A program made the position numbers and the translations under genes. The notes beneath the pieces are model-generated. The model worked only from the letters and a program-made list of their open reading frames with translations, was not told where the DNA came from and ran no database searches. Below, piece after piece: positions 7,593 through 46,176 of a stretch of 64,000 nucleotides of DNA. The number at the start of each line of letters is the position of its first letter. The first letter of the stretch is position 1. Location: positions 1 through 64,000 of IMG/VR virus record IMGVR_UViG_3300028864_000016. The stretch is one strand, 5' to 3'.

Positions 7593-7862
7593 TTATTTAC
7601 TCTTATGTTTGTTATGTCTTTTTGATTGCTTTGACCAATGTGGTTTGCTATAATCATGGATTCCACATTCTTTACATTCATCCCATAATAATATTGTGCC
7701 GTCTTCCATCCAATCACCAATATTTAAATACTTACAATATCCAGATAACTGTTTATGTTTTGTTTTATTAAAACTTAACCATTTACAGGTTTTAATATTT
7801 TTATTTTCATAACAATAACAAGTATCTTTAGGTATCCATTTTTTCATTGCTCTTTTTTTCAT
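7593..7862 (-). CDS. Small Cys-rich protein
   Basis: CYCY, CKWL, YCKY, CKECG. Confidence 0.7.
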   Translation of the reverse strand: MKKRAMKKWIPKDTCYCYENKNIKTCKWLSFNKTKHKQLSGYCKYLNIGDWMEDGTILLWDECKECGIHDYSKPHWSKQSKRHNKHKSK

Positions 7863-11825: not shown

Positions 11826-13544
11826 TCACACTGCAACTTGTTCTGATTTCTCTATTTCTGATAAATAATAATTTAATATTATTTTAGCATCTTTTAAAGT
11901 CGAACAACTACCCTTTTTAAAACTATTTCCATTTGCATCAACTGCAATAAAAGTTCCCCAAATATTTAATATATAATAATCTTGTGCATTTACTATAGTT
12001 ATATAAGCAGTTTTTTCAACCAAGTTACTACCTTGAAAATAATTATTTCCATTTGAAATTGATACATTAACTTGTTTTTTAATTCTCTTATATTCATATT
12101 CTTTTTTATTTGATAATACTGCATCAATAAACTTTTTATCTTTTTCTTTTATTATTTTACCTTTTATATCCCCTAGTTTGCTTTTATATTCACTCTCTAG
12201 TGCTATTAGCTCTCTCATTAAGTTATCGTGTCTAGAATTCATTTTAGCGTCTTTACGTGCATTTCTTCCGTCTCTACCTGTTGTCATCCAGCTTGGGTTG
12301 TCTGCATTATTTCTAAGTAGTTTATAATAATTTTCATAGTAACGTTTCTTATAACTATTTAACCATGATTTATATTTATTCTTAATTGAATTATCTTCTA
12401 ACTTATCTAATTCGATAATAAATTTATTTTGATAATTATTTAAATAATTTAATATTTCTTGTTGGTGGTCACGTTCTTTAGTTCTCATAACCCAATGACC
12501 ATCATTTTCTCTTTTGCTTATTTCTTTAGATATTAGAAAATTTTCAGCGTTTATATTATCAATGTTAATTTCTATTGGTTCAACTTCTTTTAACTCTGTT
12601 GTATTGATTGTATTATTTTCTTGTTGCCCTTCATTATTTAATAAACCTATTGATTGCAAAAATTGTTTCGCTTGCTCTGAGTCTTTAGTATACCAACATT
12701 TATTAAATTTTGCCCACCTGTAACCATTTGCTTTTAACTGATTTCTAATTTCTTCACTTGGTTTGTCATTGAAATATAATTCTATTCCGTTCTTTTCTGT
12801 ATTAAATTTAACTTCACAACCAATTTCATTGTTTATAGTTTGTTCTGTTGATTCTATTGTTATTTCTTGAATTGATTCAACTGCTGAAGTTTCTTTTGTT
12901 TCTGGTTCTGCAACAATTTCTATAACTTCAACTGGTTTAGATTCTTTTATTATATCACCTTTTTTAGTTTCTATTTTATTAAGAACTTCACAAACTTTTA
13001 TTATTTCTTGAGTTAATCCTATTGTGCAACTATATTCATTACCTGAAGAAATAGTTTGACCTTTTTTTCCTAATTCCTTGATATATATTGTTTTATTTTC
13101 TCTAAATTTAACTAACCATATAGTTCTATTTCCTATGTATTTTTCTCCAAAAGTTCCAAATTTAATTCCATTAGGAAATTTAATAATTGAACCATCTTTT
13201 ACTTCTTGATTTTCTGATTTTACAAATTCAATTACTACTTCTTCTGAGTTAATTCCATTTAAATACTCATTAACTTCCTTTTTAGCTTTCTTCAAATCAG
13301 TCACTATTTCTATATTCATATTTGGGTCATTTTTGATTGATTTTTCATTGTAAAAATAATATCTATATCCACCACTTTTTTCAGTTCCATCAAGTTTAAC
13401 TTTAATTAAGCAATATTCATTTTTTACTATTGAATATCTAGCATCTTTCTTTGTGTAATCGTGAGCTACAACATATATATCATTTTCGCCTTTAACTATA
13501 GTTCCTGTTAATTTAACAAATTGACCTTCTTGTAATTGTAACAT
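11826..13544 (-). CDS. Multidomain protein with polyvalent-protein-associated (LPD-like) domain
   Basis: NTEKNGIELYF.DKPSEEIR..LKANGYRW....KCWY motif common in phage/conjugative-element early proteins. Confidence 0.7.
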   Translation of the reverse strand: MLQLQEGQFVKLTGTIVKGENDIYVVAHDYTKKDARYSIVKNEYCLIKVKLDGTEKSGGYRYYFYNEKSIKNDPNMNIEIVTDLKKAKKEVNEYLNGINSEEVVIEFVKSENQEVKDGSIIKFPNGIKFGTFGEKYIGNRTIWLVKFRENKTIYIKELGKKGQTISSGNEYSCTIGLTQEIIKVCEVLNKIETKKGDIIKESKPVEVIEIVAEPETKETSAVESIQEITIESTEQTINNEIGCEVKFNTEKNGIELYFNDKPSEEIRNQLKANGYRWAKFNKCWYTKDSEQAKQFLQSIGLLNNEGQQENNTINTTELKEVEPIEINIDNINAENFLISKEISKRENDGHWVMRTKERDHQQEILNYLNNYQNKFIIELDKLEDNSIKNKYKSWLNSYKKRYYENYYKLLRNNADNPSWMTTGRDGRNARKDAKMNSRHDNLMRELIALESEYKSKLGDIKGKIIKEKDKKFIDAVLSNKKEYEYKRIKKQVNVSISNGNNYFQGSNLVEKTAYITIVNAQDYYILNIWGTFIAVDANGNSFKKGSCSTLKDAKIILNYYLSEIEKSEQVAV

Positions 13545-15027: not shown

Positions 15028-15713
15028 TCTCCTTTTAATTTATTATTTATCTAATCCACCATTTTTAACACAATATTCTTTTATAATTTCCTGTGCCTTC
15101 TTATGAGCGTCTTCTAATTCTCCAGTATGTAATTGGTCTCCATTCTTTAGTGAAAACAGTACAAATTCTATTGTTTGCATTGCGTTTGTTAATTCTTTAA
15201 TATCCATATTTATAACCACCTTATCTTTTATTTTATATTAATTTGTTTTCTTGAATTAATAATACCACTTTTTAATATTCCTGTCTATAGTTTTTAACAA
15301 ATTAATATAAAAAGTTTTGATAAAAGGTGGTTTTTATTGGAAGTTAATATTTGTTAATTTATTAAAAATCCAATTATCTGACCGTAAGGGAAGAAAAGCG
15401 TAGCGGTAGCTACAAGACTGTTATCCACTAAATGTTGTATTATCACCTAACGCCCTAACGGTTGTTCTTTTGCTCGTCTTTCAGACTTCACAAATAGAAT
15501 TGATTTATTTAATTGAAAAAGTGCCTATTTTAGTTAATATATATTATTACTTTTATATATATTCTATTTAACAGACACCACCTTCAACCCTAGTCATAGA
15601 GCCATTCTTTTTTGATTTTATAACTTCTCACTCTTTTAATTTGTTTAATTGTATTTGTTTTAATATGTAAAATCCTTTTATTTCTTTATATTTTAATTTA
15701 TTTTATAACTTTT

Positions 15714-16955
15714 TTAAGAAAATAGGTTATAAAAATTTTCATCTTCAAGCCATAATGTTAATAAGTTTCTCATTCTCTTTGATGGAATATAAATTGTAAT
15801 AGGTTCATAACGTCTTATTCTGCTTCTCCATAGCCATTGTATTAATTCACTTAAAGCATATAAGTCTTGATTGATTGTAATGTCTTTAGACTTAAAGAAC
15901 TGGTCTATAAAAGGCTGATTAAATATATTAATGCAATAAGCTAAATTATATCTTTCTACATAATCATTAGTTGCTCTTAGGTTACAAGCAATAAATCCTT
16001 TTGTATATCCTTTTCCTTTTAACTTACTTTGTTGATCTTTAAAGGTTGTCCATAATACAGTATCACTTTTTGCTTTTAGTTTATTGATAAAGAAATTTGT
16101 TATATTGCTTTTTAATTGTTTAACGCTTTCTTTGTTAGTATCATTTCTAAACCAACTATGACTTAAATTATAATATTCTTCACCTACTGCATTAAGTTTT
16201 TCATCATCCATAAACGTTATATTTTCTTTTAACTTATCCTTTACTTCTTTTTCAATAAGTTTGTAGTTGTCATCTTTAGATTTAATTACATATGTATTCA
16301 ATTTATTTAGATTAGCATAATAGTATTCGTATTTGATACCATTCATTTGATAATAATAACATTGTTCCTGAGCTTCAAATAAGTAAGTCAATATGTAAGC
16401 ATCTTTAAAAGCTTTGAATATTTCAACTGGAAACATCCATATAAGTATTACATCTTTATAAACTATTATACTTTTGTTTATTGCTAAGTATTTAATATTT
16501 TCAAAAGCTCCGGTATATTCTTTTTGTTCATTCCATATTAGATAATCATTTTCAATTTTTGCATAACCATCATTTATTATCATGTTAACATCATTCTTAC
16601 TTATATTACATTGCTCTATAACGTTAAATACTTCATCAAGGATTAATATATAATCATTACTTTTTAATAGTTCTACAGTCTGCATATTAGCTTTATGAAA
16701 TAGTGCATGAGTACTTACAATATTTTTACCTTCTGATATTAATTTGTTTAAGTTGTCAAATTTGTTACCGTGTTGATTATATTTAGGTTCTTGGAATCTT
16801 CTTGACTTACAATTCTTTTTAACTCTTTCAACTTCACTTAAAAACGGTGTAATATAAATATACTTATTGTTTGTTGTGTCATGATTAATCATATTTATAA
16901 TTGCACTTGTTTTTCCACTTCCCGGTATTGAATCTACTATCTTAATTCTACACAT
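15714..16955 (-). CDS. Superfamily 2 helicase-like protein (SPbeta YonV-like)
   Basis: Walker A PGSGKTS, ITPFLSE, ILDEV, motif VI-like QWLWRSRIR. Confidence 0.75.
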   Translation of the reverse strand: MCRIKIVDSIPGSGKTSAIINMINHDTTNNKYIYITPFLSEVERVKKNCKSRRFQEPKYNQHGNKFDNLNKLISEGKNIVSTHALFHKANMQTVELLKSNDYILILDEVFNVIEQCNISKNDVNMIINDGYAKIENDYLIWNEQKEYTGAFENIKYLAINKSIIVYKDVILIWMFPVEIFKAFKDAYILTYLFEAQEQCYYYQMNGIKYEYYYANLNKLNTYVIKSKDDNYKLIEKEVKDKLKENITFMDDEKLNAVGEEYYNLSHSWFRNDTNKESVKQLKSNITNFFINKLKAKSDTVLWTTFKDQQSKLKGKGYTKGFIACNLRATNDYVERYNLAYCINIFNQPFIDQFFKSKDITINQDLYALSELIQWLWRSRIRRYEPITIYIPSKRMRNLLTLWLEDENFYNLFS

Positions 16956-17291: not shown

Positions 17292-17681
17292 TTATATATT
17301 GAATGGTGTTTCTTTGTAATTATCTAGTACAATATTAATATATTTCTTATCTGCTGAATAAATAATGTCATAGTTTTCAAAATATAAGTTATTCATTTCA
17401 AATACATTCTTATAATCTAATAATCCATCCTTAGATATCATTGATCTAACTGGATATATTACTAATTTGTCTAATGTCCAATTTTGTGCTAACATGAATC
17501 TGAATCTTTTATTCTTCTTATCATAGTATAAAATATCTTGTGTCAATATATCTACTCCATATTGTAAAGGCATTTTGTCAGCAAATATAATATATTTTCC
17601 TTTCTTTAATTCACTAACTATATGTAATATACTTGTTAGTTGAGTCATTTTAATATTGTTGAATTCTTTAATTTTTATCAT
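17292..17681 (-). CDS. Hypothetical protein
   Basis: AGGAG RBS. Confidence 0.65.
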   Translation of the reverse strand: MIKIKEFNNIKMTQLTSILHIVSELKKGKYIIFADKMPLQYGVDILTQDILYYDKKNKRFRFMLAQNWTLDKLVIYPVRSMISKDGLLDYKNVFEMNNLYFENYDIIYSADKKYINIVLDNYKETPFNI

Positions 17682-17841
17682 TTTTCATTCTCCTTTTATT
17701 CTATTAATTTATTAATAATATTACTTTAAGAGTTACAACTCCAATATTTTTTGAAGCTATAACTCTTTATCTATATTAACCACTTAAAGTGGATTGTACT
17801 ATATTTATTTATATTAAATAGATTTTTAATTATTTAGCTGA

Positions 17842-18084
17842 TTAAAATTTAATTTCAATTGGTTTTAAGTCAGTTTCATTGAAAAAACCACCTGCTATTG
17901 AACCATCCTTAAATATAGTAAAATTCATCACACCTTTATGATATATACGTGGTATAGTCATAATTATATTGCCTATAGAATTAATTTTGTAAGTGATTTT
18001 ATTTAAGTCATACCCCTTATTTTCAGCTCTGTTTAATACTTTCTTAATTTGATTTTTAATTGATTCATTAATCATCTTAATCAA
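17842..18084 (-). CDS. Hypothetical protein
   Basis: RBS and leader hairpin 18097-18124. Confidence 0.65.
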   Translation of the reverse strand: MIKMINESIKNQIKKVLNRAENKGYDLNKITYKINSIGNIIMTIPRIYHKGVMNFTIFKDGSIAGGFFNETDLKPIEIKF

Positions 18085-18125
18085 TTCCTTTCAACTGCCT
18101 TAACCTCTAAAACTAGTAGGTAGCT

Positions 18126-18380
18126 TTATTTTATATTTTCTATTACTTCTAGTTTTAATTCACTATTTAATAAATATTTTACAGTCATTTCAAATGGATA
18201 TGGACTACTTGAATCTTGAAATTTGATTTTATCTTCATTAACTTCTAACACTAAAGCTAATTTCTTAGTTTCGTCTTCTTGTAAATCTTCTTCATCTTCA
18301 AATTTTAAAAGTTCTTTTGTATAGTCTATTAAAACATTATCACCTTTTTGGATTTTGCTAATTAATTCTTTTTTATTCAT
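18126..18380 (-). CDS. Hypothetical protein
   Basis: RBS and own promoter. Confidence 0.65.
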   Translation of the reverse strand: MNKKELISKIQKGDNVLIDYTKELLKFEDEEDLQEDETKKLALVLEVNEDKIKFQDSSSPYPFEMTVKYLLNSELKLEVIENIK

Positions 18381-18502
18381 TTTAAAAACTTCCTTTCATT
18401 CCGTTAATTTGTTTATGTACTTCTTATCTCTTATATTATACTATATGGATATTGAAGTCAAGCTATTTATTTTTAGTTCTTTTAATTTGTTTTAATTATA
18501 TA

Positions 18503-18754
18503 CTATTCACATACTCTATATAAAGTATTATCATTAAAGAATTCAATGTCCAATTCTTTTAATTCTTGTATTATAAAATACTTTATATCCTCATTAACAT
18601 TCCAGTTAAACAACTCACTAACATTATAATAGATTCCACCATTATAAGTTAATTGGTTTCTTATAGCTCTTGCAGTTGATTCAATATTGTTATTAAAGTT
18701 CTTATACTCTTCTTTAGTCATGTTATTATCTTTACAGTATTTTGCCATACTCAT
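18503..18754 (-). CDS. Hypothetical protein
   Basis: GAGG RBS; downstream of long structured leader. Confidence 0.65.
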   Translation of the reverse strand: MSMAKYCKDNNMTKEEYKNFNNNIESTARAIRNQLTYNGGIYYNVSELFNWNVNEDIKYFIIQELKELDIEFFNDNTLYRVCE

Positions 18755-18799
18755 ACCATATAACCTCTTTTACTTCATGTTAATTTGTTTTAAGTTTGG

Positions 18800-19104
18800 T
18801 ATTATTGTTAAGTTTCTAACCACTATCTTAACTGGCATTCGTATCTAATACCCTTGACACGCTTGTTTTATTTTATACTAGACTATATAAGTTCACGTCT
18901 CGGACTCACCTCATATAACTCATTTTTGTTCGGTCTAGTAGGATAGCTTATTCTGGTCTCCTGTCCAGAAATGGTTTTTTCAGTTAAAACCGTTATTCTA
19001 AAAACTATAGCTTTTTTGTTTAAGAAAGCCTAAAACTGCTATGTAACTCTTACACACTTGAGAGATTATTTTTTACAAGTGGTTAACTTATATCTTGTCT
19101 ACAT
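18800..19104 (-). ncRNA. Putative ~300 nt structured ncRNA or 5' leader
   Basis: Promoter TTGACG-17-TATAAT (19110-19138); ends pair (19078-19089 with 18810-18824); internal stems TACTAGAC/GTCTAGTA and TTCTGG/CCAGAA; locally GC-richer and ORF-free. Confidence 0.55.
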
Positions 19105-20846
19105 CTATTATTATATATTAATTTGTTTATATCGTCAATACCTTTTTTATAGTTTTCTTAATTTATTTAAAATATATTTTTGAACTTATTTAATATTTAT
19201 TATAGTTACATTTATATAGTTTATTTGTATTATCTTTTATAATAGCTCTAATGGATTATATAAGCCGTTAAACTGGTTTTATAATATAATTATATTAATA
19301 CTCTATTAGTTCCAATATAATATAGCTATTAGAGTTTATATGACGTTATACTACTTTAGTTATGCAATTGTATTGTTATATAGTTAGTTGGTTATATAAT
19401 CTTATTCTATACTTATATCATTTGTAGTTCTTATATATGTTAGTATAGATTATAGATATATAGTTTCATTATATAGTATTGCTATAAGTTCTATTGTATT
19501 GTATAGTAGTTTACTATGTTGATGCATAAGAGTTCTAAAATGGTTTTATAATTGATCCTGATATATTAGTTACTTACTTATAATATGTATTCATTCCAGT
19601 TAATATATATTAGACACTTATATAATATTGCATTGTTAGTTATTAATAAGTTATGCCTTATATAGTCTTTATGTTAGGTTATAACGTTGTTAGTAATGCA
19701 ATTATAAGTGTTAATATATAAGCGTTGTATGAGTTTGTTAGGATTGTTATAATAGATATTACTATAATACAATGGTATCATATTGTTATTACTGCTTTAT
19801 ATAGATAGTTATTCAATATAGTTTCTAGATGTTAGTTGCATTATGATATTCTTATTAGTTTATATAGTTTTATATGTGATATACTATTTAATTATATATG
19901 TTATACTAATAGATTGAATATCGTTAATATTGTATACTTTATGTTAGTTATGGTTTGTTTAGTGTATACTATTGTAGTTGTGTATGATATATTAATGGCA
20001 TTGTATTAGTGTTTATATTATACAGTTTGTTGTTGAATGTTTATATATGTTATACTTTATATGTATTGTGATATACTATAAGTGTTATAACAACCTCAGT
20101 TGCTTTAAAACGAAAAATAAACCAGTAAATTCAATAATAGTTCGTATTTTAAAAATCAGACCTTGACCAGTTCCCTATCGTATGAGTAGATAAAAGATTG
20201 ATTTTAAGAATAGATATGTAACATTTGATACAATATGAGCATGATAATATCTAACATAAATCAGTAATTATATGCAAACAAGTTATATATGTACTATATT
20301 AAATATACATTTAGTGAAGTTGGTTTGTAACCGTTTGTATGACTAGCTTTGCAGGTTTTAATGTGCTAAAAAGTGGTATTTTTATGGTTTAGTTGTGTGG
20401 TTTATTGGATATAATTGTGCTGGTTTGTATGCTTATAGGTATAGGGGGGCGTGTTTTACATTTTAGTGTTCATTTGCTGAACGTAATAGTGCCACATCAC
20501 ATTATGTCGGATATGGAGGTTGGATTTTGACGATAGCATAAAAACACGAACATTAACCATTTTTAACATCGTTAAAGCAATCGTCGAGGCTTGTCATACC
20601 AACATGTTGAACTATTTAAAAATTAAAAATTTGAACATATTATCTATTAGATAATCCTCGAACCAAGTCATACCAACCTATAGAACGATACATACTAACA
20701 AACTTATAAATATAAGTAATCTTAAATACGCATTAACTACCCTTAACCTATTGATATCACAAGCCTAAGACCAATTATTTACATACAATAAAAAGAGACG
20801 CACTACTTGTCCTTATCGTACATCTCTAATTTCCAATTTATATATT

Positions 20847-22529
20847 TTAATTTATTATAGAATCTAATTTTTTGTGCAATCCTTGAAACCCACATTTTAA
20901 ATCATATGGATATATGTATAAATGTTTATACCCTACTTTCATCAATTCTCCATATTTTATATATTTCTTTTTCATTTTATCCATATAATACTGAACTCCC
21001 GTAGATTTACTAATATCACTATTATTATACATTCCCCAGTACTCTACAAGATACGTACCTTTATTTAAGCAAACTATCCAATCTGGAGTCATTCCATTAA
21101 TGATTATAGTATCTGGTCTATTTCGTTCATTATGTATTATATTACCCAATTTACTTCTTATCTGTTCATCTACTTGAGCTTCTTCTAAACTATCAAAGTT
21201 ACTTCTATATGGATTTACATTAAAGTCCAATTCTATAAATTTATTAGGATAGCAATCATTAATCCAATCAAATAAAGTATTATAACTTTTTTTCTTATAT
21301 AAAGCGTAATATAAAGGGCTGGCATTTTGATGTAATGCTGACTTTGTAACATACAAAGGTATTTTATCTATCGGAATATTTAAATCTTTCTCTATATAAT
21401 ATTTCATATCAAAAATCATATTGCCTTTGTTTTTATAATAATTAGTTGACTTCAATATAAATTTATATCCTGCAAATTTATTATTATAATATTTAACAAT
21501 AAATTCTAAGGCTGTCCAATTACCACCAGTAAATTGAGCTAACTTTGCTCCCATTAGTAGTTTTTCATAATCTTTAAATGTTAATATATCATCAATATGT
21601 ACATTATTTTCTTTAATGTATCTCTCAAATATATCTTTCCCCTCATCAAATGATAACTTGTCAATTGTATAATTAGGATATGACCAAGGTCTATTTTTGC
21701 AATCATTATTGCTAATGAGTTTGTTCAATTTTATATTGTCAATTTTATAAAATTTAAAATTAAAGTAATTTGTTATATAATCTTTATGTAATTGTTCCTT
21801 ATTTATTAAATTATTATCATAATACCATTGTATTATTTTTAATTCATTATCAAGACTACCTTTAAATTCAAAAGATTTATTATGGCAATATGTATTATAA
21901 AATTTTATTATGTCTTGTTTATATATATTAAATCCATCATTACCAAACGCTTTATAGATATTTCTAACATATGAGTTATTACATATAATAGGATATGTAC
22001 TAGTTTTGCAATTCTTACATCTATGAGTATAACCATCATCTACCCTATCATCTGGAAGAAAGAATTTATTATCTAAGGGAAACTTTCTCTCACATTTAAC
22101 ACAAGTATACCATTTTATATCTTCATTAATATGTTCAGACATATATTCTTCAATACAGTATTTCATGTAATCATCATATTCAACTTTTCTAACTATATCA
22201 TATTTATTCTCGCATCCAATATAATCACAAAATATATTATGTCTTTTTAATTTGTTAATATCCTTATTCTTATTTAATTTACATTCACTCAAATATTTAA
22301 TCCAACCATCTTTATTCATACAATTAGTCTCTTGTGGGCTTGTACCTTTAAAAGTATAATCAATAATATATCTTTTCACATAATACTCGTGTTTATTTTT
22401 TAAAATAGTAGGATTATAACTTTTTAATAGAAATTGCTCTACTACATACTTAATCGGATACCATTTCTCACCTCCTTCCTCACAATAAGGAATAATAACA
22501 CCGTCTAACTCAATTTGCTTGTCCTTCAT
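20847..22529 (-). CDS. Putative endonuclease/DNA-binding protein (antirepressor-like N-terminus, Zn finger, C-terminal PD-(D/E)xK-like domain)
   Basis: CVKC..CKNC Zn finger; TPDWIV...LVEYWGM...KKK. Confidence 0.6.
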   Translation of the reverse strand: MKDKQIELDGVIIPYCEEGGEKWYPIKYVVEQFLLKSYNPTILKNKHEYYVKRYIIDYTFKGTSPQETNCMNKDGWIKYLSECKLNKNKDINKLKRHNIFCDYIGCENKYDIVRKVEYDDYMKYCIEEYMSEHINEDIKWYTCVKCERKFPLDNKFFLPDDRVDDGYTHRCKNCKTSTYPIICNNSYVRNIYKAFGNDGFNIYKQDIIKFYNTYCHNKSFEFKGSLDNELKIIQWYYDNNLINKEQLHKDYITNYFNFKFYKIDNIKLNKLISNNDCKNRPWSYPNYTIDKLSFDEGKDIFERYIKENNVHIDDILTFKDYEKLLMGAKLAQFTGGNWTALEFIVKYYNNKFAGYKFILKSTNYYKNKGNMIFDMKYYIEKDLNIPIDKIPLYVTKSALHQNASPLYYALYKKKSYNTLFDWINDCYPNKFIELDFNVNPYRSNFDSLEEAQVDEQIRSKLGNIIHNERNRPDTIIINGMTPDWIVCLNKGTYLVEYWGMYNNSDISKSTGVQYYMDKMKKKYIKYGELMKVGYKHLYIYPYDLKCGFQGLHKKLDSIIN

Positions 22530-26902: not shown

Positions 26903-27988
26903 TTATCTTTTGAAATCATTCATTGCTCTACTAAATAAATTATCTATATCATCATCATCTATAATATCTTCAAATTTAGTCTCTTCTATAGTTTCAGATT
27001 TTTCATTAGTTTTAGTGTTGTTAGTATGTTTGGATTTAAAAGAAAAACCACGATTTTTATTTTTTCCTTTTTTTAATTCTCTTTCTGTTAATTCTGATTC
27101 AATGTCTTCTATATCGTCATTTGGAGTTTCACAACCACCAAGACAAATTAAGTTACTTTTTCCATAAGTTTTAAACATTGTTTTATCAGCATTTATTAAT
27201 TCAAGTATATCTGCTATATTGTATTTTTCTGTAACATTTATAGCTCCATACTCACAGTCTAAATCATTTGGCAGTGCAAATACACTTTTTTCTTGAGCTT
27301 CACTTATTGCATCCTCTAATGAACTATAATTAGTTGGTAATTGCAATACAATTCCATATCCTTTAGACGTAGTAACATTAGTTAAATTATCCTCATCTAT
27401 ACTACCAATTGCATCATGTCCTAACATACTATAGGATTTATTTATTAATTTAATTGATTCAGTATTAATTTCTTCATATGTGTCACGTTTGTTATTATTA
27501 ATAAATTTTATATCATTAATTAAATTAGATATTTCTGATAATTCTTCACAACATTCTAAAGCATTTTTTAATTGTAAGTTGTCTTCCTTAAGACTTGGCA
27601 AAACTCCAACAACATTAATTATCATATTAGGAAATATCTTTTTAATAGTTCTTATAAATTCAGGTACAGTACCTGATCCAGTCCCTCCACCCATTGCCGT
27701 GAATATTAAAATATATTTAAACTGAGCATATTTTTTTAAAAAAGAAGCTAATCTAACTTGGTCATTTAATATAAATTTATTTGCTCTTTCTCTATTTCTT
27801 CCTGACCCGTCTGCTCCACCATAAATAAAAACATTACTATCAATATCAGCAAAACGAAGTCCTTTTATATCTCCTAAACTTGAATTAATATAAATACTTG
27901 TATATCTTTCATTTACTGTTCTCATTAAATCTGCTAATACATTACCACATTGCCCTAAACCAGCTATTAATAGATTATCACGTTTCAT
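26903..27988 (-). CDS. tubZ: Tubulin/FtsZ-family partition GTPase TubZ
   Basis: GLGQCGN, GADGSGRNR, tubulin signature GGGTGSG, T7-like IDEDN, basic/acidic tail; terminator 26858-26891. Confidence 0.88.
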   Translation of the reverse strand: MKRDNLLIAGLGQCGNVLADLMRTVNERYTSIYINSSLGDIKGLRFADIDSNVFIYGGADGSGRNRERANKFILNDQVRLASFLKKYAQFKYILIFTAMGGGTGSGTVPEFIRTIKKIFPNMIINVVGVLPSLKEDNLQLKNALECCEELSEISNLINDIKFINNNKRDTYEEINTESIKLINKSYSMLGHDAIGSIDEDNLTNVTTSKGYGIVLQLPTNYSSLEDAISEAQEKSVFALPNDLDCEYGAINVTEKYNIADILELINADKTMFKTYGKSNLICLGGCETPNDDIEDIESELTERELKKGKNKNRGFSFKSKHTNNTKTNEKSETIEETKFEDIIDDDDIDNLFSRAMNDFKR

Positions 27989-28266
27989 TATTTAACATCT
28001 CCCTTTTTACTATATATTTCTTTTAATCTTTCTACACCTTTAGGTAGGATATAATAAGTTTTTGTATTCACCAATTTTACACCTTCAGCTATTAGTTCAT
28101 ATTCCATTAAAGCATTTAATGCACGATTTACTGTGCTTGAACTTAAATTTATTTTTTTAGCTATCATATCTTTTGTCATTCCCCTAGCTTCACATAAACC
28201 TAAGTCGTCTTGCTTGTTCCTAACAGCACTTAATACTAAAAATGAGTTACTGTTTAAAATAGACAC
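27988..28266 (-). CDS. tubR: Winged-helix centromere-binding protein TubR
   Basis: HTH IAKKINLSSSTVNRALNAL with wing KTYYI; coupled upstream of tubZ. Confidence 0.75.
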   Translation of the reverse strand: MSILNSNSFLVLSAVRNKQDDLGLCEARGMTKDMIAKKINLSSSTVNRALNALMEYELIAEGVKLVNTKTYYILPKGVERLKEIYSKKGDVK

Positions 28267-28353
28267 TTGGTAATACCTCCTTCATATGTTCGTATTTCTA
28301 TTATATTCAAGTTATTATCAAAATGCAACCATAACTTTTTAAATATTATTATA

Positions 28354-28443
28354 TCTATTCATGTATTAGTCATTACTATTCATAAAATAGTCAAATTAAC
28401 CTATTAACTATTCATGTTTTGACTACTTTGTGAATAGTAATGA
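28354..28443. repeat. Candidate tubC centromere/TubR operator
   Basis: 26 bp inverted repeat 28370-28395/28418-28443 (2 mismatches) and repeated CTATTCA units upstream of tubR. Confidence 0.6.
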
Positions 28444-28552
28444 TATTTATTAGAATTTTTATAGTTTTATATAAAATTATTTGGATATTACAAGAATTTA
28501 TATGATTAATATATAGTTATTGTATAATTTATGTGATAATTATTTGAATAAT

Positions 28553-28745
28553 TAAATTAAACTAAACTAAAATTACCAATATATTAAATTAAACTAAATT
28601 AAATATTTAATAGTTATAATGTAAATTAAACTAATACATCTAAACTTTTAAACTAATGTAATGTTATAATTTTACTAAATTAAAGTCAATTAATTTCTTT
28701 ACTTTAATTTAATTATATGTTATTTTTATATTAATTTAGTTTAAT
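28553..28745 (+). repeat. TAAATTAAACTAA repeats upstream of tubY
   Basis: Copies at 28553, 28585, 28622 plus partial inverted copy 28734-28745. Confidence 0.6.
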
Positions 28746-28760
28746 AGGGAGGTATTATTA

Positions 28761-31655: not shown

Positions 31656-33062
31656 ATGAAAGAAAAAACAGAAATAGTAAAAAAGGAATTATCATTAGAA
31701 TACCTACCACATAGAGGTAAGTTAATTAACTGGAAAGAATTAGTAGGTAAATTTGTACATTTTGTATATGGAGACATTGAGGGATTTATTGAGATTGTAG
31801 AATATTATATAGAAGAAAATAAAATTAAAACAAGATATAAAGACATAGAATATATAACAACAACTAGTAATTTTCAAAAAATAAAAATCTCGAATTGTTT
31901 AGGGATAAAAAGAAAAAACAGTAAAAAAGTAGGGTTTGAATATAATGTAGGGGATATTATAACCACCAATAATGGTAAAATTAAAATAATAAAACAAATT
32001 AGAGTTGGAGAAAAAAATATAAGAAGTTATGAGTATAAGTGCTTAATAGATGGAGATATAGATACCATAAGAGAATATGATTTAATTAAAGGTTGTGGTT
32101 GTAAAGTTTGTTCAAATCATAAAGTAGTGAAAGGTATAAATGACATTGCAACTACTCACCCATATTTAGTGAAGTATTTCAAAAACATAGAAGATACTTA
32201 TACTCATTCATACGGAAGTAAAGATAATTTTATATTCAAATGTCCAGACTGTGGTTGCGAAAAAGAAATGATAATAGTATTTTTTATTAAGCAAAATTAT
32301 TGTTGTCCTAAATGCAGTGATGGAATTTCTGTGGCACAAAAGATAATGTTTAATATTTTTGAACAGTTAAACGTAGATTTTATAACTGAATATAATCCTG
32401 ATTGGATTAAACCTAGAAGGTATGATTTTTACTTTAAAATACAAGATAAAAAATACATACTTGAAACAGATGGTGGTTGGCATATAAAAGATAATAATAG
32501 AAGTGGACAAACCAAGGAAAAATCTAAGTCAATAGATGATTATAAGGATGAGCAAGCTGTTTTAAATGGTATTGAAAAACCAATTAGAATAGATTGTAAT
32601 TATGGAAGTAAGGATAGATTTGAATATATCAGACAAAATATATTAAATAGTAAAAAACTAAATAAATTATTTGATTTAAGTAAAATTGATTGGAATAAAT
32701 GTTTTGATTTTTCATTATCATCAAGAATAAAAGAAGCTTGTGAATATAAGAAAAATAATCCTAATATGGCTACTGGTGATATAAGTAAAATAATGAAATT
32801 ATCACAAAGTAGTATAACAAATTTTCTCAAAGTGGGAAATGAAATGGGTTTATGTTATTATGACACTAAAGAAGAAATTAAAAAAAGTGGAAAGATAAAT
32901 AGTAAAAAAGTTATTTGTTTAGATGATGGATTGATTTTTGATTCAGCTAGAGAAGCAGGACGATTTTATAAATGTCATGGAAACAAAGTTTCAGCAGTAT
33001 GTCGTGGAGAAAGACAGTCTACTGGAGAGCGACATTTTTCATATAATAACATAACCAAATAA
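31656..33062 (+). CDS. Free-standing putative homing endonuclease (zinc ribbons, DUF559/PD-(D/E)xK-like nuclease, NUMOD1-like tail)
   Basis: CKVC, CPDC, CPKC; RYDFYF...ILETDGGWH...DDYKD; FDSAREA...VCRG. Confidence 0.75.
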   Translation: MKEKTEIVKKELSLEYLPHRGKLINWKELVGKFVHFVYGDIEGFIEIVEYYIEENKIKTRYKDIEYITTTSNFQKIKISNCLGIKRKNSKKVGFEYNVGDIITTNNGKIKIIKQIRVGEKNIRSYEYKCLIDGDIDTIREYDLIKGCGCKVCSNHKVVKGINDIATTHPYLVKYFKNIEDTYTHSYGSKDNFIFKCPDCGCEKEMIIVFFIKQNYCCPKCSDGISVAQKIMFNIFEQLNVDFITEYNPDWIKPRRYDFYFKIQDKKYILETDGGWHIKDNNRSGQTKEKSKSIDDYKDEQAVLNGIEKPIRIDCNYGSKDRFEYIRQNILNSKKLNKLFDLSKIDWNKCFDFSLSSRIKEACEYKKNNPNMATGDISKIMKLSQSSITNFLKVGNEMGLCYYDTKEEIKKSGKINSKKVICLDDGLIFDSAREAGRFYKCHGNKVSAVCRGERQSTGERHFSYNNITK

Positions 33063-37265: not shown

Positions 37266-40046
37266 ATGTCTAAGCAATTGTATAGTCAAAGATTTATATT
37301 AAAAATCCATTCATCAAGATTAAAGTTAAGCAAATGGAGCTTGGATATAAATTTAAAAGAAGCTAGAGACAATGAAGAATTAATATCATTAGGGGATGGT
37401 CAGTTATTAAGATTCATAAGAGAAATACGAAATATTAACAACACAGAAAAACAAATTAAAGAAATCAAAAAGGAAATTAAAGATGTAAAAAATGATAAGA
37501 ATAGTAAAAAAAATAAAGAAAAAATAATGGAATTATATAATGAATTGGATAAAATGTTATATATCAAAGATTATATAGCAATTGTATTTGATAAAAAATC
37601 AGATTTTGATAGAGCAACTGGAAAGAAAGGTGTATTTATAAATGGGAAGAGATATAAAAGATTAATTGGTACTACTGGAGGTGTAAAAGGAAATACAGTA
37701 ATGTTTTGTACTGAGGAAATACATAAAGAATTAAATGATAGATTAGAAAATGGAAGAAAAAAAGACGTTCCAATAATACCAGCAAAGTTTGAAGCTTATA
37801 AATCATTATCTGCAAGTGTATCTACTCCAGTAACTCAAACAGATAGAATATTAGTTATTAAAGATGGAACTACTCACATAAAAGATAAAGTTATTAGAGT
37901 GTATGATAATGATAAAGGTGGATTTAAAGTAGACCATAATGTTGAATATGAAGCTGACAAAGACTTTACAGATGGCGGAGGAATGGTAAGACCTTCAATT
38001 ATGGAACAATGGGCTATTGACTTGGGATTAACTAAAGGAGACGATAATGGGGATATAGTTGCTGATTATATCCCAAGTGGAGTAAACTCAAGATGGTCAT
38101 ATGAAAAAGGAATGCTAGTGACTTATGATTTTGAAATGTTTGCAAAAGAAATAGCTGGTACATATGAAGTTATAGATGCTTGGGGAAATAAACATGACAT
38201 TAGAAACATTGATATTATATTAACTACTAATATGCTAAAACTATGGAACGCTTATGATGATATAGACGATTACTTGAACAATTGTAAAAAGAATAATTTT
38301 TTACTAAGTGTTACAAAAGTTACTCCTAAAGAATTAGAAATAAAAAGAAATATGAATTATCAATACTTACAAAGTTATAACTTATCAGATGAAGATATTA
38401 CTGAATTAACATCCGAAACAGTAAATAATATAAAAGATGTTATAAGTGGTGATTATATAAAATCAATTCTATTTTCAAAAGGAATACATATAACAAAAGG
38501 CAATATTCTGAAATCAGATTATGATTATATAAGAGCTTTAACAATAGATAAAAGAGTGTTACAAGATTCATATGTTAAAAGTAAAATATATAAAATGATT
38601 GAAAAAACAATAAAGGAAGCTAAGAAAGGTGTAATTCAAACTAATGGTTCGTACTCAATAATTATAGGCGATATGTATGCACTCTGTCAGTCAATGTTTG
38701 GATTACCAATTACGGGTTTATTGAAAAAAGGAGAATTCTATAGTAGGACTTGGTCAGATAGGGGGAAAAAAGAAATAGTAGGATTCCGTTCACCTATGAC
38801 TTCTCACAATAATGTTAGAAAACATAAATTAGTTGATAATGAAGAATTAAGAAAATGGTTTAAATACATAAGAACTATGACAGTGTTTAATGCTTGGGAT
38901 ACTACAACAGATGCTATGAACGGGGCAGATTTTGATTCAGATGCAGAAATAGAAATAGATGATGATGTCATTACTAGAAATACTAGAAATGAATTAGCTA
39001 TTATTTGTGAACAAAAGTCAGCAAGTAAAGTAAAAGTTACTGAAAGCTTATTAAAAAAATCAAATAAAAATGGTTTTGGTGATGATATTGGAACTATTAC
39101 TAATAGAGTTACTGCAATGTTCGATGTATTAGCTTCATTAAAAGAAGGAACATTAGAATATAAAGAATTAATGGATAGAATAATATGTGGACAAGCATAT
39201 CAACAAGAAAGTATAGATAAAATAAAAGGAATTCAAGCTAAGCAAATGCCTAAACATTGGTATGATTATAAATGTAATAAGGTTAAACTTGAAGATAGTA
39301 AAGAAATAAGCGAAGAAAAAAATAAGAATATTAAATTAATGGTAAACAAAAAGCCTTATTTCTTTATTTATAACTATGACAATTTATTTAATAAATATAG
39401 AACATTTATTAAAAATGTTAAAAATAACTCATTAATTAAATTTGGATTGACTTTAGATGAATTAAAAAATAAGGAAAATAAAACTGAAGATGAGATAAAG
39501 TTTTTAAATTCAATACAATATAAAAGTCCAGTATTTTCAAATCCATGTACTATGAATAAAATATGTTGGAAAATTGAAGATGAATTCAAAGATATTAAAC
39601 TAAAAGTTAATAACTCTGATGGGTTTGACAAAGAGATATTAAAGACTAAGGTAAAATATGATAAAAATACATACTTAGAAATTGAAAATCTATATAGAGA
39701 ATATTTAAGACAACAAAAGCAATTTGGGCAAACTGCAAGATATAAATTAACAAAGGAAGAAAAAGATAGTCAAAGACAAATATTTGTTGAAAATTTTAAA
39801 ACTAAAGCCATTGAGATGTGCTCAAATAGTGAAATATTATGTAATATTGTCATTGATATAACTTATAAGGGCAAGAACCACAGGCAATTTGCATGGGATA
39901 TTTGTGGGGAACAAATCATTGAAAACTTATTAAATAAGAATGACAGGAAATATAAATATCCATTACAAGATAAAAACGGAGATATTGAATGGCAAGGGTT
40001 AAAATTTAAAGTAATAGAATTGGAGGACAAAGTATGCGAGGAGTAA
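37266..40046 (+). CDS. YonO-like single-subunit (RdRP-fold) DNA-dependent RNA polymerase
   Basis: FTDGGG, KGML, FRSP, catalytic-loop NGADFDSD, IGTITN, QESIDK.K; upstream of HU and head genes as in SPbeta. Confidence 0.85.
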   Translation: MSKQLYSQRFILKIHSSRLKLSKWSLDINLKEARDNEELISLGDGQLLRFIREIRNINNTEKQIKEIKKEIKDVKNDKNSKKNKEKIMELYNELDKMLYIKDYIAIVFDKKSDFDRATGKKGVFINGKRYKRLIGTTGGVKGNTVMFCTEEIHKELNDRLENGRKKDVPIIPAKFEAYKSLSASVSTPVTQTDRILVIKDGTTHIKDKVIRVYDNDKGGFKVDHNVEYEADKDFTDGGGMVRPSIMEQWAIDLGLTKGDDNGDIVADYIPSGVNSRWSYEKGMLVTYDFEMFAKEIAGTYEVIDAWGNKHDIRNIDIILTTNMLKLWNAYDDIDDYLNNCKKNNFLLSVTKVTPKELEIKRNMNYQYLQSYNLSDEDITELTSETVNNIKDVISGDYIKSILFSKGIHITKGNILKSDYDYIRALTIDKRVLQDSYVKSKIYKMIEKTIKEAKKGVIQTNGSYSIIIGDMYALCQSMFGLPITGLLKKGEFYSRTWSDRGKKEIVGFRSPMTSHNNVRKHKLVDNEELRKWFKYIRTMTVFNAWDTTTDAMNGADFDSDAEIEIDDDVITRNTRNELAIICEQKSASKVKVTESLLKKSNKNGFGDDIGTITNRVTAMFDVLASLKEGTLEYKELMDRIICGQAYQQESIDKIKGIQAKQMPKHWYDYKCNKVKLEDSKEISEEKNKNIKLMVNKKPYFFIYNYDNLFNKYRTFIKNVKNNSLIKFGLTLDELKNKENKTEDEIKFLNSIQYKSPVFSNPCTMNKICWKIEDEFKDIKLKVNNSDGFDKEILKTKVKYDKNTYLEIENLYREYLRQQKQFGQTARYKLTKEEKDSQRQIFVENFKTKAIEMCSNSEILCNIVIDITYKGKNHRQFAWDICGEQIIENLLNKNDRKYKYPLQDKNGDIEWQGLKFKVIELEDKVCEE

Positions 40047-41668: not shown

Positions 41669-41720
41669 TAATTAAAACAAATTAATGTTTTAAAATATAT
41701 TTAAAAAGAAGGAATGTTGT

Positions 41721-45519: not shown

Positions 45520-45890
45520 ACATTGCAGACACTCATGTGAGGTTTGACAATTTATTAATTTTATAACGAATATTAAACGTGTAACGAGAATTGCATAGAA
45601 GTAGAAAATGGTTCTCTACAGACTCGAAAGAGTATCTCAGATGATGGATACACCGACCATCCTATGCAATTTAATAAAACAACTATTTTAGAAGGTATTT
45701 AAGTGAGGGCTAACACTCATTCCCCAGAGTAATTTTTATTTACTCGTCACTCCTTGAGGGGACGTTAAAATAATATTCAAGGCAAGGTTAGAATAGGGCG
45801 TGAAAACCTAACAAAGTGTTGAATTGAGTTATGATGACTTTAACAAAAAAGTAGGCGATTTGATAATGTGAAGTTATCCATCGCCTATAT
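45520..45890 (+). ncRNA. Cluster of stem-loops, putative ncRNA(s)
   Basis: AATTGCATAG/CTATGCAATT (45589-45671) enclosing three hairpins; further stems to 45888; ORF-free. Confidence 0.45.
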
Positions 45891-45939
45891 TTCTAAATAA
45901 ATATTTATAATAGAGTCTGAACGTTGAAAAACATGCAGA

Positions 45940-46176
45940 TTGTTAATGAATATTAAAGTAAAGAGTAAAGGAAGATATAAAATGGTGATGAAATTTGATG
46001 GACGTGAGAGTAATAAATCTAAGAGAAAAAGACATAAGACACAAAAGTGTTCAAGTTGTAAAAATACGCTAGATATAGATACCTATATTGATAGAAATGA
46101 CTTTGATAGAATAAGTGAAGACACTATTATTATATATTGTGAGAAATGTGGAAATGAAGAATTAATTAAATTATAA
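45940..46176 (+). CDS. Small zinc-ribbon protein
   Basis: CSSC...CEKCG; true start probably internal. Confidence 0.55.
   Translation: MLMNIKVKSKGRYKMVMKFDGRESNKSKRKRHKTQKCSSCKNTLDIDTYIDRNDFDRISEDTIIIYCEKCGNEELIKL

What the first reader, a model, noticed from the sequence alone, without database searches (positions are those of the whole stretch)
18800..19104. ~300 nt highly structured RNA heading the early arm
ORF-free, GC-richer segment behind a consensus promoter. Its 5' and 3' ends pair and enclose several stems (TACTAGAC/GTCTAGTA around a branched domain, TTCTGG/CCAGAA, GGTTTT/AAAACC). I cannot match it to tRNA, tmRNA, 6S or a known riboswitch. Inference: a phage ncRNA, antiterminator or decoy.
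Basis: partly seen in the sequence, partly recalled or inferred. Interest (0 to 1): 0.6.

Follow-up and report, generated by a model that had tools for sequence, protein, structure and literature searches.

The report
Orphan hairpin-rich leader beside phage origin
A roughly 310-base non-coding, GC-richer, hairpin-rich stretch sits between a strong promoter and the first gene next to the likely replication origin of a 218 kb peat phage related to Clostridium phage c-st; it is probably transcribed, but it matches no known RNA family, none of the phage's relatives has it, and its working strand and function remain open.

Summary
The segment is real. It has no ORF and is 33-39% GC against a background of about 22-25%. 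It lies directly behind a near-consensus sigma-70-type promoter, but that promoter is on the minus strand (19138-19110). "Highly structured" holds only for the plus strand: z is -2.8 for the whole segment and -3.7 for a three-way junction at 18939-19000. The promoter-driven minus strand folds no better than shuffled sequence (z -0.9). Each short stem alone is at chance level.

Rfam and ARAGORN find nothing. No copy or relative was found anywhere I searched, except identical copies of this phage. Relatives keep the flanking modules, an origin-like region and the 83-aa gene, but join them with short leaders or in other arrangements.

One exact 179-nt contig from a metatranscriptome covers 18861-19039. 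It carries no strand information.

My best reading (confidence 0.4) is a lineage-specific insert that forms a ~350-nt 5' leader of the first replication-side transcription unit and acts in cis. The rivals are a plus-strand antisense RNA, a non-functional mosaic junction, and a DNA-level origin accessory. The antiterminator and decoy readings have no support. Interest is modest.

The parts
19110..19138 (-). Sigma-70/sigma-A-type promoter TTGACG-17-TATAAT. The predicted start is near 19103, reading leftwards through the element.
   Evidence: The scan gives 11 of 12 matches. Relatives carry consensus promoters at the same position: L010 9150-9178 TTGACA-17-TATAAT and D-1873 TTGATA-17-TATAAT.
18755..19103 (-). 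Predicted 5' leader of about 350 nt for the 83-aa gene (18503-18754) and the genes behind it. The orphan insert is about 18790-19100.
   Evidence: Inferred from the promoter and the ORF map. Homology with loci of relatives of the 83-aa gene stops at 18764-18786.
18780..18790 (-). Copy of the genome-wide motif AAACAAATTAA just ahead of the SD of the 83-aa gene. It marks the left edge of the orphan insert.
19118..19128 (-). Second copy of the motif, inside the promoter spacer. It marks the right edge of the insert. A 28-nt direct repeat, 18763-18790 and 19101-19128 (79% identical), brackets the element.
18876..18940 (.). Hairpin closed by TACTAGAC/GTCTAGTA (8 bp) around an imperfect upper stem.
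   Evidence: Folds: z -2.0 on the minus strand and -1.1 on the plus strand.
18906..18912 (-). SD-like box GAGGUGA in the leader, followed after 9 nt by GUG and a 7-codon frame.
   Evidence: Read from the sequence. Its function is inferred only.
18939..19000 (+). Three-way junction. A 9-bp closing stem (18939-18947 with 18992-19000, two G-U pairs) holds hairpins 18951-18970 and 18973-18991.
   Evidence: -19.6 kcal/mol, z -3.68, 0 of 200 shuffles as stable, and the MFE fold makes up 38% of the ensemble. The minus strand gives z -0.99.
18951..18980 (+). Terminator-like hairpin TTCTGG-8-CCAGAA followed by a run of six T at 18975-18980.
   Evidence: this is the only such site in 18300-21200, where 0.3 is expected, so one by chance is not rare.
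19010..19029 (+). Hairpin GCTTTTTT-GTTT-AAGAAAGC with one G-U pair, which becomes a C-A mismatch on the minus strand.
19034..19084 (+). Compound hairpin that includes CACTTG 19055-19060 with CAAGTG 19076-19081.
18854..18859 (+). Perfect TTGACA without a -10 box at 16-18 nt. It is the only candidate plus-strand promoter element inside the segment.
   Evidence: Read from the sequence. It is not listed by the scan.
18861..19039 (.). Stretch covered by an exact 179-nt contig from a metatranscriptome library (run X19).
   Evidence: table 8, record 9. The contig carries no strand, and DNA carry-over is not excluded.

Best explanation
The segment is a lineage-specific non-coding insert of about 310 nt. 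It makes up most of an unusually long 5' leader of about 350 nt.

The leader belongs to the first transcription unit to the left of the phage's putative replication origin. That unit holds an 83-aa winged-helix-like protein, four small proteins, and a DEAD/ResIII-like helicase.

The leader is transcribed on the minus strand by the host RNA polymerase from the near-consensus promoter at 19138-19110.

I propose that it acts in cis on its own mRNA. Its hairpins, and the SD-like GAGGUGA box far from any real gene start, would set the stability or processing of the leader. They would thereby set the output of the genes behind it. This would work like the 5' stabilisers and STAB-SD leaders known in Firmicutes.

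The motif AAACAAATTAA at its 3' edge marks the point where the usual short leader of this phage's genes begins.

What is shown: the promoter, the absence of coding, the composition, the hairpins, the absence from relatives, and one RNA-library contig. What is inferred: the strand, the leader role and the stabilising action.
For: - **Promoter.** It matches 11 of 12 positions on the minus strand, directly ahead of the segment.
- **Relatives' promoters.** Relatives have a consensus promoter at the same end of the same origin-like region, followed by short leaders of about 20-110 nt. Transcription in this direction is therefore the conserved arrangement, and the 300 nt are an addition to it.
- **RNA contig.** The exact RNA-library contig 18861-19039 spans the plus-strand terminator-like site and starts upstream of any plausible plus-strand start. 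This fits a through-going leader transcript better than a short plus-strand RNA.
- **Cassette-like layout.** Two co-oriented copies of the gene-linked motif bracket the element, as if it were a gene cassette without an ORF.
- **Composition.** GC is 0.33-0.39, above both coding (about 0.25) and non-coding (about 0.22) DNA of this genome. The Rfam-confirmed skipping-rope RNA locus shows the same enrichment.
- **First gene.** It looks like a small winged-helix protein, and helicase and primase genes follow. This is a setting where dosage control is expected.
Against: - On the minus strand the fold is no better than shuffled sequence: z -0.92 for the whole segment and -0.99 over the three-way junction. 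Only the left hairpin reaches z -2.0.
- The best-defined fold and the only terminator-like hairpin are on the plus strand.
- No homologue exists, so there is no covariation support.
- There is one low-depth contig from one of three RNA runs. It has no strand, and DNA carry-over is not excluded.
- The stabiliser role rests on sequence resemblance recalled from the literature and was not tested.
Confidence: 0.4

Rival explanations
1. The segment encodes a plus-strand structured small RNA, a countertranscript. It would be transcribed rightwards from within or just left of the segment. It would fold into the three-way junction and further hairpins, and partly end at the 18951-18980 terminator-like hairpin. 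By pairing with the complementary early leader it would tune expression of the replication-side genes, in the manner of plasmid copy-control antisense RNAs.
For: - The plus-strand folds are significant: z -3.68 for 18930-19005 with the MFE at 38% of the ensemble, and z -3.5 for 18936-19090. The minus strand gives about -0.9 to -1.0.
- As DNA the two strands are alike (z -1.9 and -1.6), so the asymmetry comes from G-U pairs.
- The only terminator-like hairpin lies on the plus strand.
- The phage is a relative of plasmid-prophages. It has a TubZ-like tubulin, and the element sits between the origin-like region and the helicase and primase genes.
Against: - There is no plus-strand promoter with normal spacing.
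- The sense leader has no hairpin with a U-run that could serve as an attenuator, and the complementary stretch ends more than 100 nt from the RBS.
- One terminator-like site against 0.3 expected is weak evidence.
- The control RNA in the same genome scores better on its wrong strand (z -3.13 against -2.77), so z does not assign strand.
- The RNA contig overruns both predicted ends of a short plus-strand RNA.
Confidence: 0.2
2. The segment is a non-functional filler at a mosaic junction. It would be DNA left where two shuffled modules, the origin region and the 83-aa gene cassette, were joined. It is transcribed passively because it lies behind a promoter, and its stems are chance.
For: - The element is absent from every relative, while both flanking modules occur elsewhere in other arrangements.
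- Homology breaks exactly at the repeated motif.
- The individual stems are at chance level, and the transcribed strand has an unremarkable fold.
Against: - GC well above both coding and non-coding background is unexpected for drifting DNA in a 26% GC genome.
- The plus-strand junction fold beat 200 of 200 shuffles.
- One of only two exact pieces seen in RNA run X19 falls on this segment.
Confidence: 0.25
3. The segment is a DNA-level accessory of the replication origin, such as a single-strand initiation or primosome-assembly signal, or a set of protein-binding palindromes.
For: It adjoins the largest non-coding region of the genome. That region has iteron-like repeats, a conserved 25-nt box and an AT-rich, strand-skewed stretch, and it is conserved in four relatives.
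Against: - With DNA parameters neither strand stands out (z -1.9 and -1.6).
- The four palindromes differ in sequence, so they are not repeated sites for one protein.
- Relatives with the same origin-like module lack the element.
- The CS-6 motif TAGCGT, recalled from memory as typical of ssoA-type signals, is absent.
Confidence: 0.08
4. The segment would be a processive antiterminator RNA, like put of HK022, or a decoy RNA at the head of the early arm.
For: It lies directly behind a strong promoter at the head of a run of co-oriented genes.
Against: - The arm has many consensus promoters of its own and eight terminator-like sites. It is a chain of short units, not one long operon.
- Relatives lack the element.
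- There is no Rfam match.
- The sense-strand fold is not above chance.
- Nothing points to a bound partner.
Confidence: 0.07

Closest known systems
Long 5' leaders with stabilising elements in Firmicutes (SD-like 'STAB-SD' of cryIIIA; phage SP82 5' stabiliser). Recalled from the literature, not checked here.
   Same: Both are long untranslated leaders behind a sigma-A-type promoter. Both have a strong SD-like box (here GAGGUGA at 18912-18906) far from the real start codon, and hairpins near the 5' end.
   Different: No sequence relation was tested or expected. No processing site or half-life data exist. The box is followed by a 7-codon frame.
Countertranscript control of replication genes in plasmids (pT181 and pIP501 RNAIII; ColE1 RNAI/RNAII). 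Recalled from the literature.
   Same: In both, a leader of about 330-350 nt precedes replication-side genes next to an origin, and the opposite strand carries multiple stem-loops and a terminator-like hairpin. The host replicon is a relative of plasmid-like prophages.
   Different: Here there is no properly spaced antisense promoter, no attenuator terminator in the sense leader, and no overlap with the RBS.
Leader-derived immunity RNAs of phage-plasmids (P4 CI, P1/P7 C4, N15). Recalled from the literature.
   Same: In both, a small structured RNA lies in the leader of an early operon of a plasmid-like prophage. Short repeats could pair alternatively: UAGAC at 19101-19097 and 18939-18935 against GUCUA at 18883-18879 on the minus strand.
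   Different: Rfam gives no match to any family. The known systems are from Proteobacteria. No processed RNA is shown, and the complementarity is only 5-8 nt.
skipping-rope RNA (RF02924) in the same window, 45591-45669
   Same: Both are GC-richer ORF-free islands in this phage with comparable fold scores (z about -2.8 to -3.7).
   Different: There is no sequence or model similarity, and the finding matches no Rfam model.

Membership tests
Any Rfam 15 family (riboswitches, 6S, C4, T-box, IS605-orfB and the rest) | Score at or above the family's gathering threshold | tested here: not met
   The best hit is 17.7 bits against a threshold of 98 (SodB thermometer, E 0.71 in a 346-nt search).
tRNA / tmRNA | Cloverleaf or tmRNA recognised by ARAGORN | tested here: not met
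   One search finds none in the window. The three-way junction lacks a D arm and a T-loop A58 (read from the sequence).
Terminator-attenuator leader (riboswitch-like) | Intrinsic terminator on the sense (minus) strand between promoter and gene | tested here: not met
   One search lists no minus-strand terminator-like site in 18755-19103. The minus-strand sequence has no hairpin directly followed by a U-run.
Countertranscript (antisense RNA) control | Antisense promoter inside the leader | tested here: inconclusive
   TTGACA at 18854-18859 is followed by a -10-like box only at 14 nt (TATACT) or 19 nt (TAGACT). Neither is listed by the scan.
Countertranscript (antisense RNA) control | Antisense terminator and stem-loops | tested here: met
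   A hairpin at 18951-18970 is followed by six T. The plus-strand three-way junction has z -3.68.
Countertranscript (antisense RNA) control | The target overlaps the RBS, or an attenuator lies in the sense leader | tested here: not met
   The complementary stretch ends more than 100 nt from the SD at about 18765, and there is no sense-strand terminator.
Processive antitermination RNA (put-like) | Downstream terminators within one long operon that must be read through | tested here: inconclusive
   The first minus-strand terminator-like site is at 15414. The arm also carries many consensus promoters of its own.
Processive antitermination RNA (put-like) | Conserved paired stem-loop structure among related phages | tested here: not met
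   The element is absent from all relatives found.
STAB-SD / 5' stabiliser leader | SD-like box in the leader that does not serve a real gene | tested here: met
   GAGGUGA at 18912-18906 is followed by GUG and only 7 codons.
STAB-SD / 5' stabiliser leader | The box lengthens mRNA half-life | not testable with these tools
   This needs half-life measurements with and without the box.
Single-strand origin / ssi signal | Strand-specific stable fold of single-stranded DNA, with conserved motifs | tested here: not met
   DNA folds give z -1.88 and -1.64 on the two strands. TAGCGT is absent.

The most novel reading that the evidence does not exclude
The element is a new, lineage-restricted regulatory RNA pair of a c-st-like plasmid-prophage. 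A long sense leader and a structured plus-strand countertranscript built around the three-way junction would sit at the junction of origin and replication genes. Together they would set copy number or the switch between maintenance and lytic growth.
Probability: 0.15. Interest if true: 0.5.

Novelty: new member of a known kind. Interest (0 to 1): 0.3.

Why it matters
If the element is functional, it would be a first handle on how this little-studied group of large Clostridium-type plasmid-prophages controls the genes next to its origin. The group includes environmental relatives of c-st and D-1873.

It would also show that such control elements can be gained as ORF-less cassettes between repeated intergenic motifs.

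If it is filler, it is a clean example of a mosaic junction. It is also a caution that GC-rich hairpin clusters behind promoters are not necessarily RNA genes.

In either case the surrounding 2.1-kb region and the genome-wide motif are the more reusable observations.

Tried and rejected
**Searches and tests that found nothing**
- Rfam at gathering score and at E<=10, on 64 kb, 2.6 kb and 346 nt, gave nothing.
- ARAGORN found nothing.
- A hidden gene under recoded stops was rejected.
- blastn of the element found only chance-level short matches. Targets were the phage's own genome, the records of three relatives, the phage collection and the plasmid collection.
- An exact 25-mer and a stem-aware pattern found only an identical contig from the same sample in IMG/VR, and nothing in GTDB genomes.
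- A covariance model of 18936-19090 matched nothing at E<=10 in the phage's own genome and four relatives' records, other than the element itself. In the eight held loci of relatives the best hit was 12.3 bits at E 0.44, which is noise.

**Searches by neighbouring genes**
- The 560-aa neighbour found only the phage itself and one relative at 74% identity in IMG/VR and JGI metagenomes, and nothing in GTDB genomes.
- The helicase found one relative.
- The 83-aa gene found ten homologues at 52-72% identity. Five contigs were fetched, and none has the element.

**Ideas rejected**
- A trans target at 55218-55237 (18 of 20 complementary) was rejected as chance (E 0.22).
- The right half as a leftover 3' end of a plus-strand gene, as placed in L025, was rejected. 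L025 has no such hairpins there.
- Promoter similarity to the skipping-rope locus is not informative.

**Not completed or not available**
- Strand assignment from reads was not possible.

Full report
**Setting**

The window is the first 64 kb of a 218,173-bp IMG/VR virus record. The record is 26% GC and is found in many peat metagenomes.

- A 926-aa protein at 37266-40046 is 50% identical to a protein of Clostridium phage c-st. It belongs to the YonO-like single-chain RNA polymerases (YonO function from PMC5467207).
- The 560-aa protein next to the finding has its only match in the phage collection in Clostridium phage D-1873, at 34% identity.
- A TubZ/PhuZ-like tubulin lies at 26903-27988.

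The phage is therefore an environmental relative of the large plasmid-like prophages of Clostridium. I did not look for or examine any toxin genes.

**The observation**

The finding lies at the left edge of the largest ORF-free gap of the whole genome, 18755-20846.

- No stop-codon recoding opens a frame there.
- GC rises to 0.33-0.35 (200-nt windows), and up to 0.39 in 120-nt windows, over 18800-19100. The left flank is 0.20-0.27 and the right flank 0.15-0.22.

The "consensus promoter" is real but lies on the minus strand: TTGACG-17-TATAAT at 19138-19110, 11 of 12. It reads leftwards through the segment into the 83-aa gene (start 18754). The plus-strand TTGACA at 18854-18859 has no -10 box at a workable distance.

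**Is the fold more than chance?**

| Stretch | Plus strand | Minus strand |
|---|---|---|
| Whole 305 nt | z -2.76 (0 of 100 shuffles) | z -0.92 |
| 18936-19090 | z -3.5 (0 of 200) | z -0.89 |
| 18930-19005 (three-way junction) | z -3.68 | z -0.99 |
| 18873-18944 (left hairpin, 18876-18940) | z -1.1 | z -2.0 |

- The best-defined piece is a three-way junction at 18939-19000. A 9-bp closing stem with two G-U pairs encloses the TTCTGG/CCAGAA and GGTTTT/AAAACC hairpins. Its MFE fold makes up 38% of the ensemble.
- The left hairpin is slightly better on the minus strand.
- Folded as DNA, the two strands are alike and unremarkable: z -1.9 and -1.6.
- As a control, the Rfam-confirmed skipping-rope RNA of this window scores z -2.77 on its true strand and -3.13 on the wrong one.

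The size of the plus-strand score is therefore typical of a real small RNA in this genome. The score cannot decide the strand. Single 6-8-bp stems are expected by chance in 305 AT-rich bases (my arithmetic).

**Known families**

Rfam gives nothing at gathering score or at E<=10, even when only 346 nt are searched. ARAGORN finds no tRNA or tmRNA.

**Relatives**

The element has no copy elsewhere in its own genome. It has no match in:

- three related IMG/VR records and the D-1873 contig, by blastn or covariance model;
- the phage and plasmid collections;
- IMG/VR or GTDB genomes, by pattern scans.

An identical contig from the same sample is the only other copy.

Both flanking modules do occur elsewhere.

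- The origin-like region recurs in L010, L012, D-1873 and L025. In L010 and D-1873 it ends in a consensus promoter. In L010, L012 and D-1873 it is followed by a short leader of about 20-110 nt.
- The 83-aa gene has ten homologues at 52-72% identity. In five fetched contigs it follows another gene directly. Nucleotide homology with the window stops at 18764-18786, which is at the motif AAACAAATTAA.
- In L025 the origin-like region lies downstream of the gene, in another orientation and without the element.

The roughly 310 nt at 18790-19100 are thus an orphan insert at a junction of shuffled modules. They are bracketed by a 28-nt direct repeat that contains the motif. Covariation cannot be tested.

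**Transcription**

Three wetland metatranscriptome runs hold small parts of 17500-21500. When laid on the stretch, run X19 gives only two exact pieces.

- One is a 179-nt contig at 18861-19039, which lies wholly inside the finding.
- The other is at 20293-20437, in the second GC-richer island.

Runs X18 and X20 add pieces at 18277-18406, 19766-19976 and 20180-20731. None lies in the 560-aa gene. All are unstranded, low-depth contigs, and DNA carry-over was not controlled. This is suggestive evidence that the element is present in RNA, not proof. It says nothing about strand or ends.

The contig crosses the plus-strand terminator-like site and starts upstream of any plausible plus-strand start. 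A through-going minus-strand leader explains this most simply.

**What it most likely is**

Transcription from the minus-strand promoter is the conserved arrangement in relatives, so the element is at least part of a ~350-nt leader.

I rank first (0.4) a cis-acting leader. In this reading the hairpins and an SD-like GAGGUGA box (18912-18906, followed by only seven codons) influence mRNA stability or processing. This would be in the manner of STAB-SD and 5'-stabiliser leaders of Firmicutes, a resemblance recalled from the literature and not tested.

The genes behind the leader fit a need for dosage control.

- The first gene product resembles a winged-helix domain in the Atlas model.
- A DEAD/ResIII-like helicase follows at 15714-16955.
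- A primase-like protein lies further on, at 11826-13544, behind intervening promoters and terminator-like sites, so outside this unit.

**Rivals**

- **A plus-strand countertranscript (0.2).** It explains the plus-strand fold and the terminator-like hairpin at 18951-18980. It lacks a credible promoter, an attenuator in the sense leader and overlap with the RBS. One terminator-like site where 0.3 are expected is also weak evidence.
- **A non-functional mosaic junction (0.25).** It fits the orphan status and the chance-level single stems. It does not fit the GC enrichment, the junction fold or the RNA contig.
- **A DNA-level origin accessory (0.08).** The DNA folds do not support it, and relatives with the same origin-like module lack the element.
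The left arm carries at least ten strong minus-strand promoters and eight minus-strand terminator-like sites, so it is a chain of short units. Nothing indicates a binding partner.

**Context worth recording**

The rest of the gap looks like a replication origin.

- There are iteron-like 37-nt repeats at 20579-20615 and 20653-20689.
- A ~25-nt box at 20439-20464 is 88-91% identical in L012 and D-1873, despite only 34% protein identity of the neighbouring gene in D-1873.
- An AT-rich stretch of about 0.9 kb is G-poor on the gene-sense strand in the window, L010, L012 and L025.
- A long hairpin lies at 19600-19719, with z -5.7.

The motif AAACAAATTAA occurs 23 times in the window against 0.9 expected, and 47 times in the genome. 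It is always co-oriented with the genes. In about half the copies an SD-like box and start codon follow within 28 nt, and in several copies a -10 box lies just upstream.

**Verdict**

The feature is real and its description partly correct. It is probably transcribed. It is an orphan, and its function is not established. It is best filed as a new, lineage-specific member of the broad class of phage leader or antisense non-coding elements. Interest is modest unless stranded expression data or diverged homologues appear.

Noticed in passing
window, 23 sites (e.g. 18404-18414, 18780-18790, 19118-19128, 41675-41685); 47 in the whole genome: The motif AAACAAATTAA occurs 23 times in the window against 0.9 expected. 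It is always co-oriented with the local genes. In about half the copies an SD-like box and start codon follow within 28 nt, and in several copies a -10 box lies just upstream. It also occurs in the D-1873 non-coding region. It may be a phage-wide promoter-proximal or 5'-UTR signal of unknown function.
   Followed up: partly
window 19104-20846: This is the largest ORF-free region of the genome and looks like a replication origin. It has 37-nt iteron-like repeats at 20579-20615 and 20653-20689. A ~25-nt box at 20439-20464 is conserved at 88-91% in L012 and D-1873. An AT-rich stretch of about 0.9 kb is G-poor on the gene-sense strand. The architecture recurs in L010, L012, L019 and L025.
   Followed up: partly
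window 20180-20731: This second GC-richer non-coding island is covered by contigs in all three RNA libraries laid (X18, X19, X20). It is 69-75% identical to L010. It could be an RNA, or the iteron part of the origin.
   Followed up: partly
window 19600-19719: A long hairpin or inverted repeat has z -5.7 on the plus strand and -4.2 on the minus strand. The overlapping stretch 19632-19759 is 74% identical to L010.
   Followed up: no
window 20790-20829 (minus strand): A probable intrinsic terminator follows the 560-aa gene (z -3.9). The same hairpin, with changed stem bases, is present in L010 at 7700-7740.
   Followed up: no
window 45591-45669 (+): skipping-rope RNA (RF02924) scores 61.6 bits. 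The GC-richer, hairpin-rich 270 nt after it (45670-45940) are also ORF-free.
   Followed up: no
window 37266-40046 (+); 26903-27988 (-) and 27988-28266 (-): A YonO-like single-chain RNA polymerase is 50% identical to a protein of phage c-st. A TubZ/PhuZ-like tubulin has a small upstream gene and an AT-rich (16% GC) divergent region at 28267-28760, which may be a partition locus.
   Followed up: partly
window 18503-18754 (-): The first gene behind the element has no Pfam or PHROG hit. Its Atlas model resembles winged-helix domains (RecQ, MCM or ScpA type), with TM 0.56-0.72.
   Followed up: partly
L020 (IMGVR_UViG_3300030114_000007) and L010 (IMGVR_UViG_3300030114_000018): One sample holds a contig with an identical RNA polymerase gene. 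By my coordinate arithmetic that contig ends near window position 23.1 kb. The same sample holds a contig whose 560-aa gene is only 74% identical. A mosaic relative with a swapped origin-side module is likely.
   Followed up: no
window 31656-33062 (+): A 468-aa ORF has PHROG hits to homing or intron-encoded endonucleases.
   Followed up: no
window 15028-15713: Another ORF-free gap has a GC peak of 0.38 near 15378 and a terminator-like hairpin at 15414-15399 on the minus strand. There is no Rfam match.
   Followed up: no
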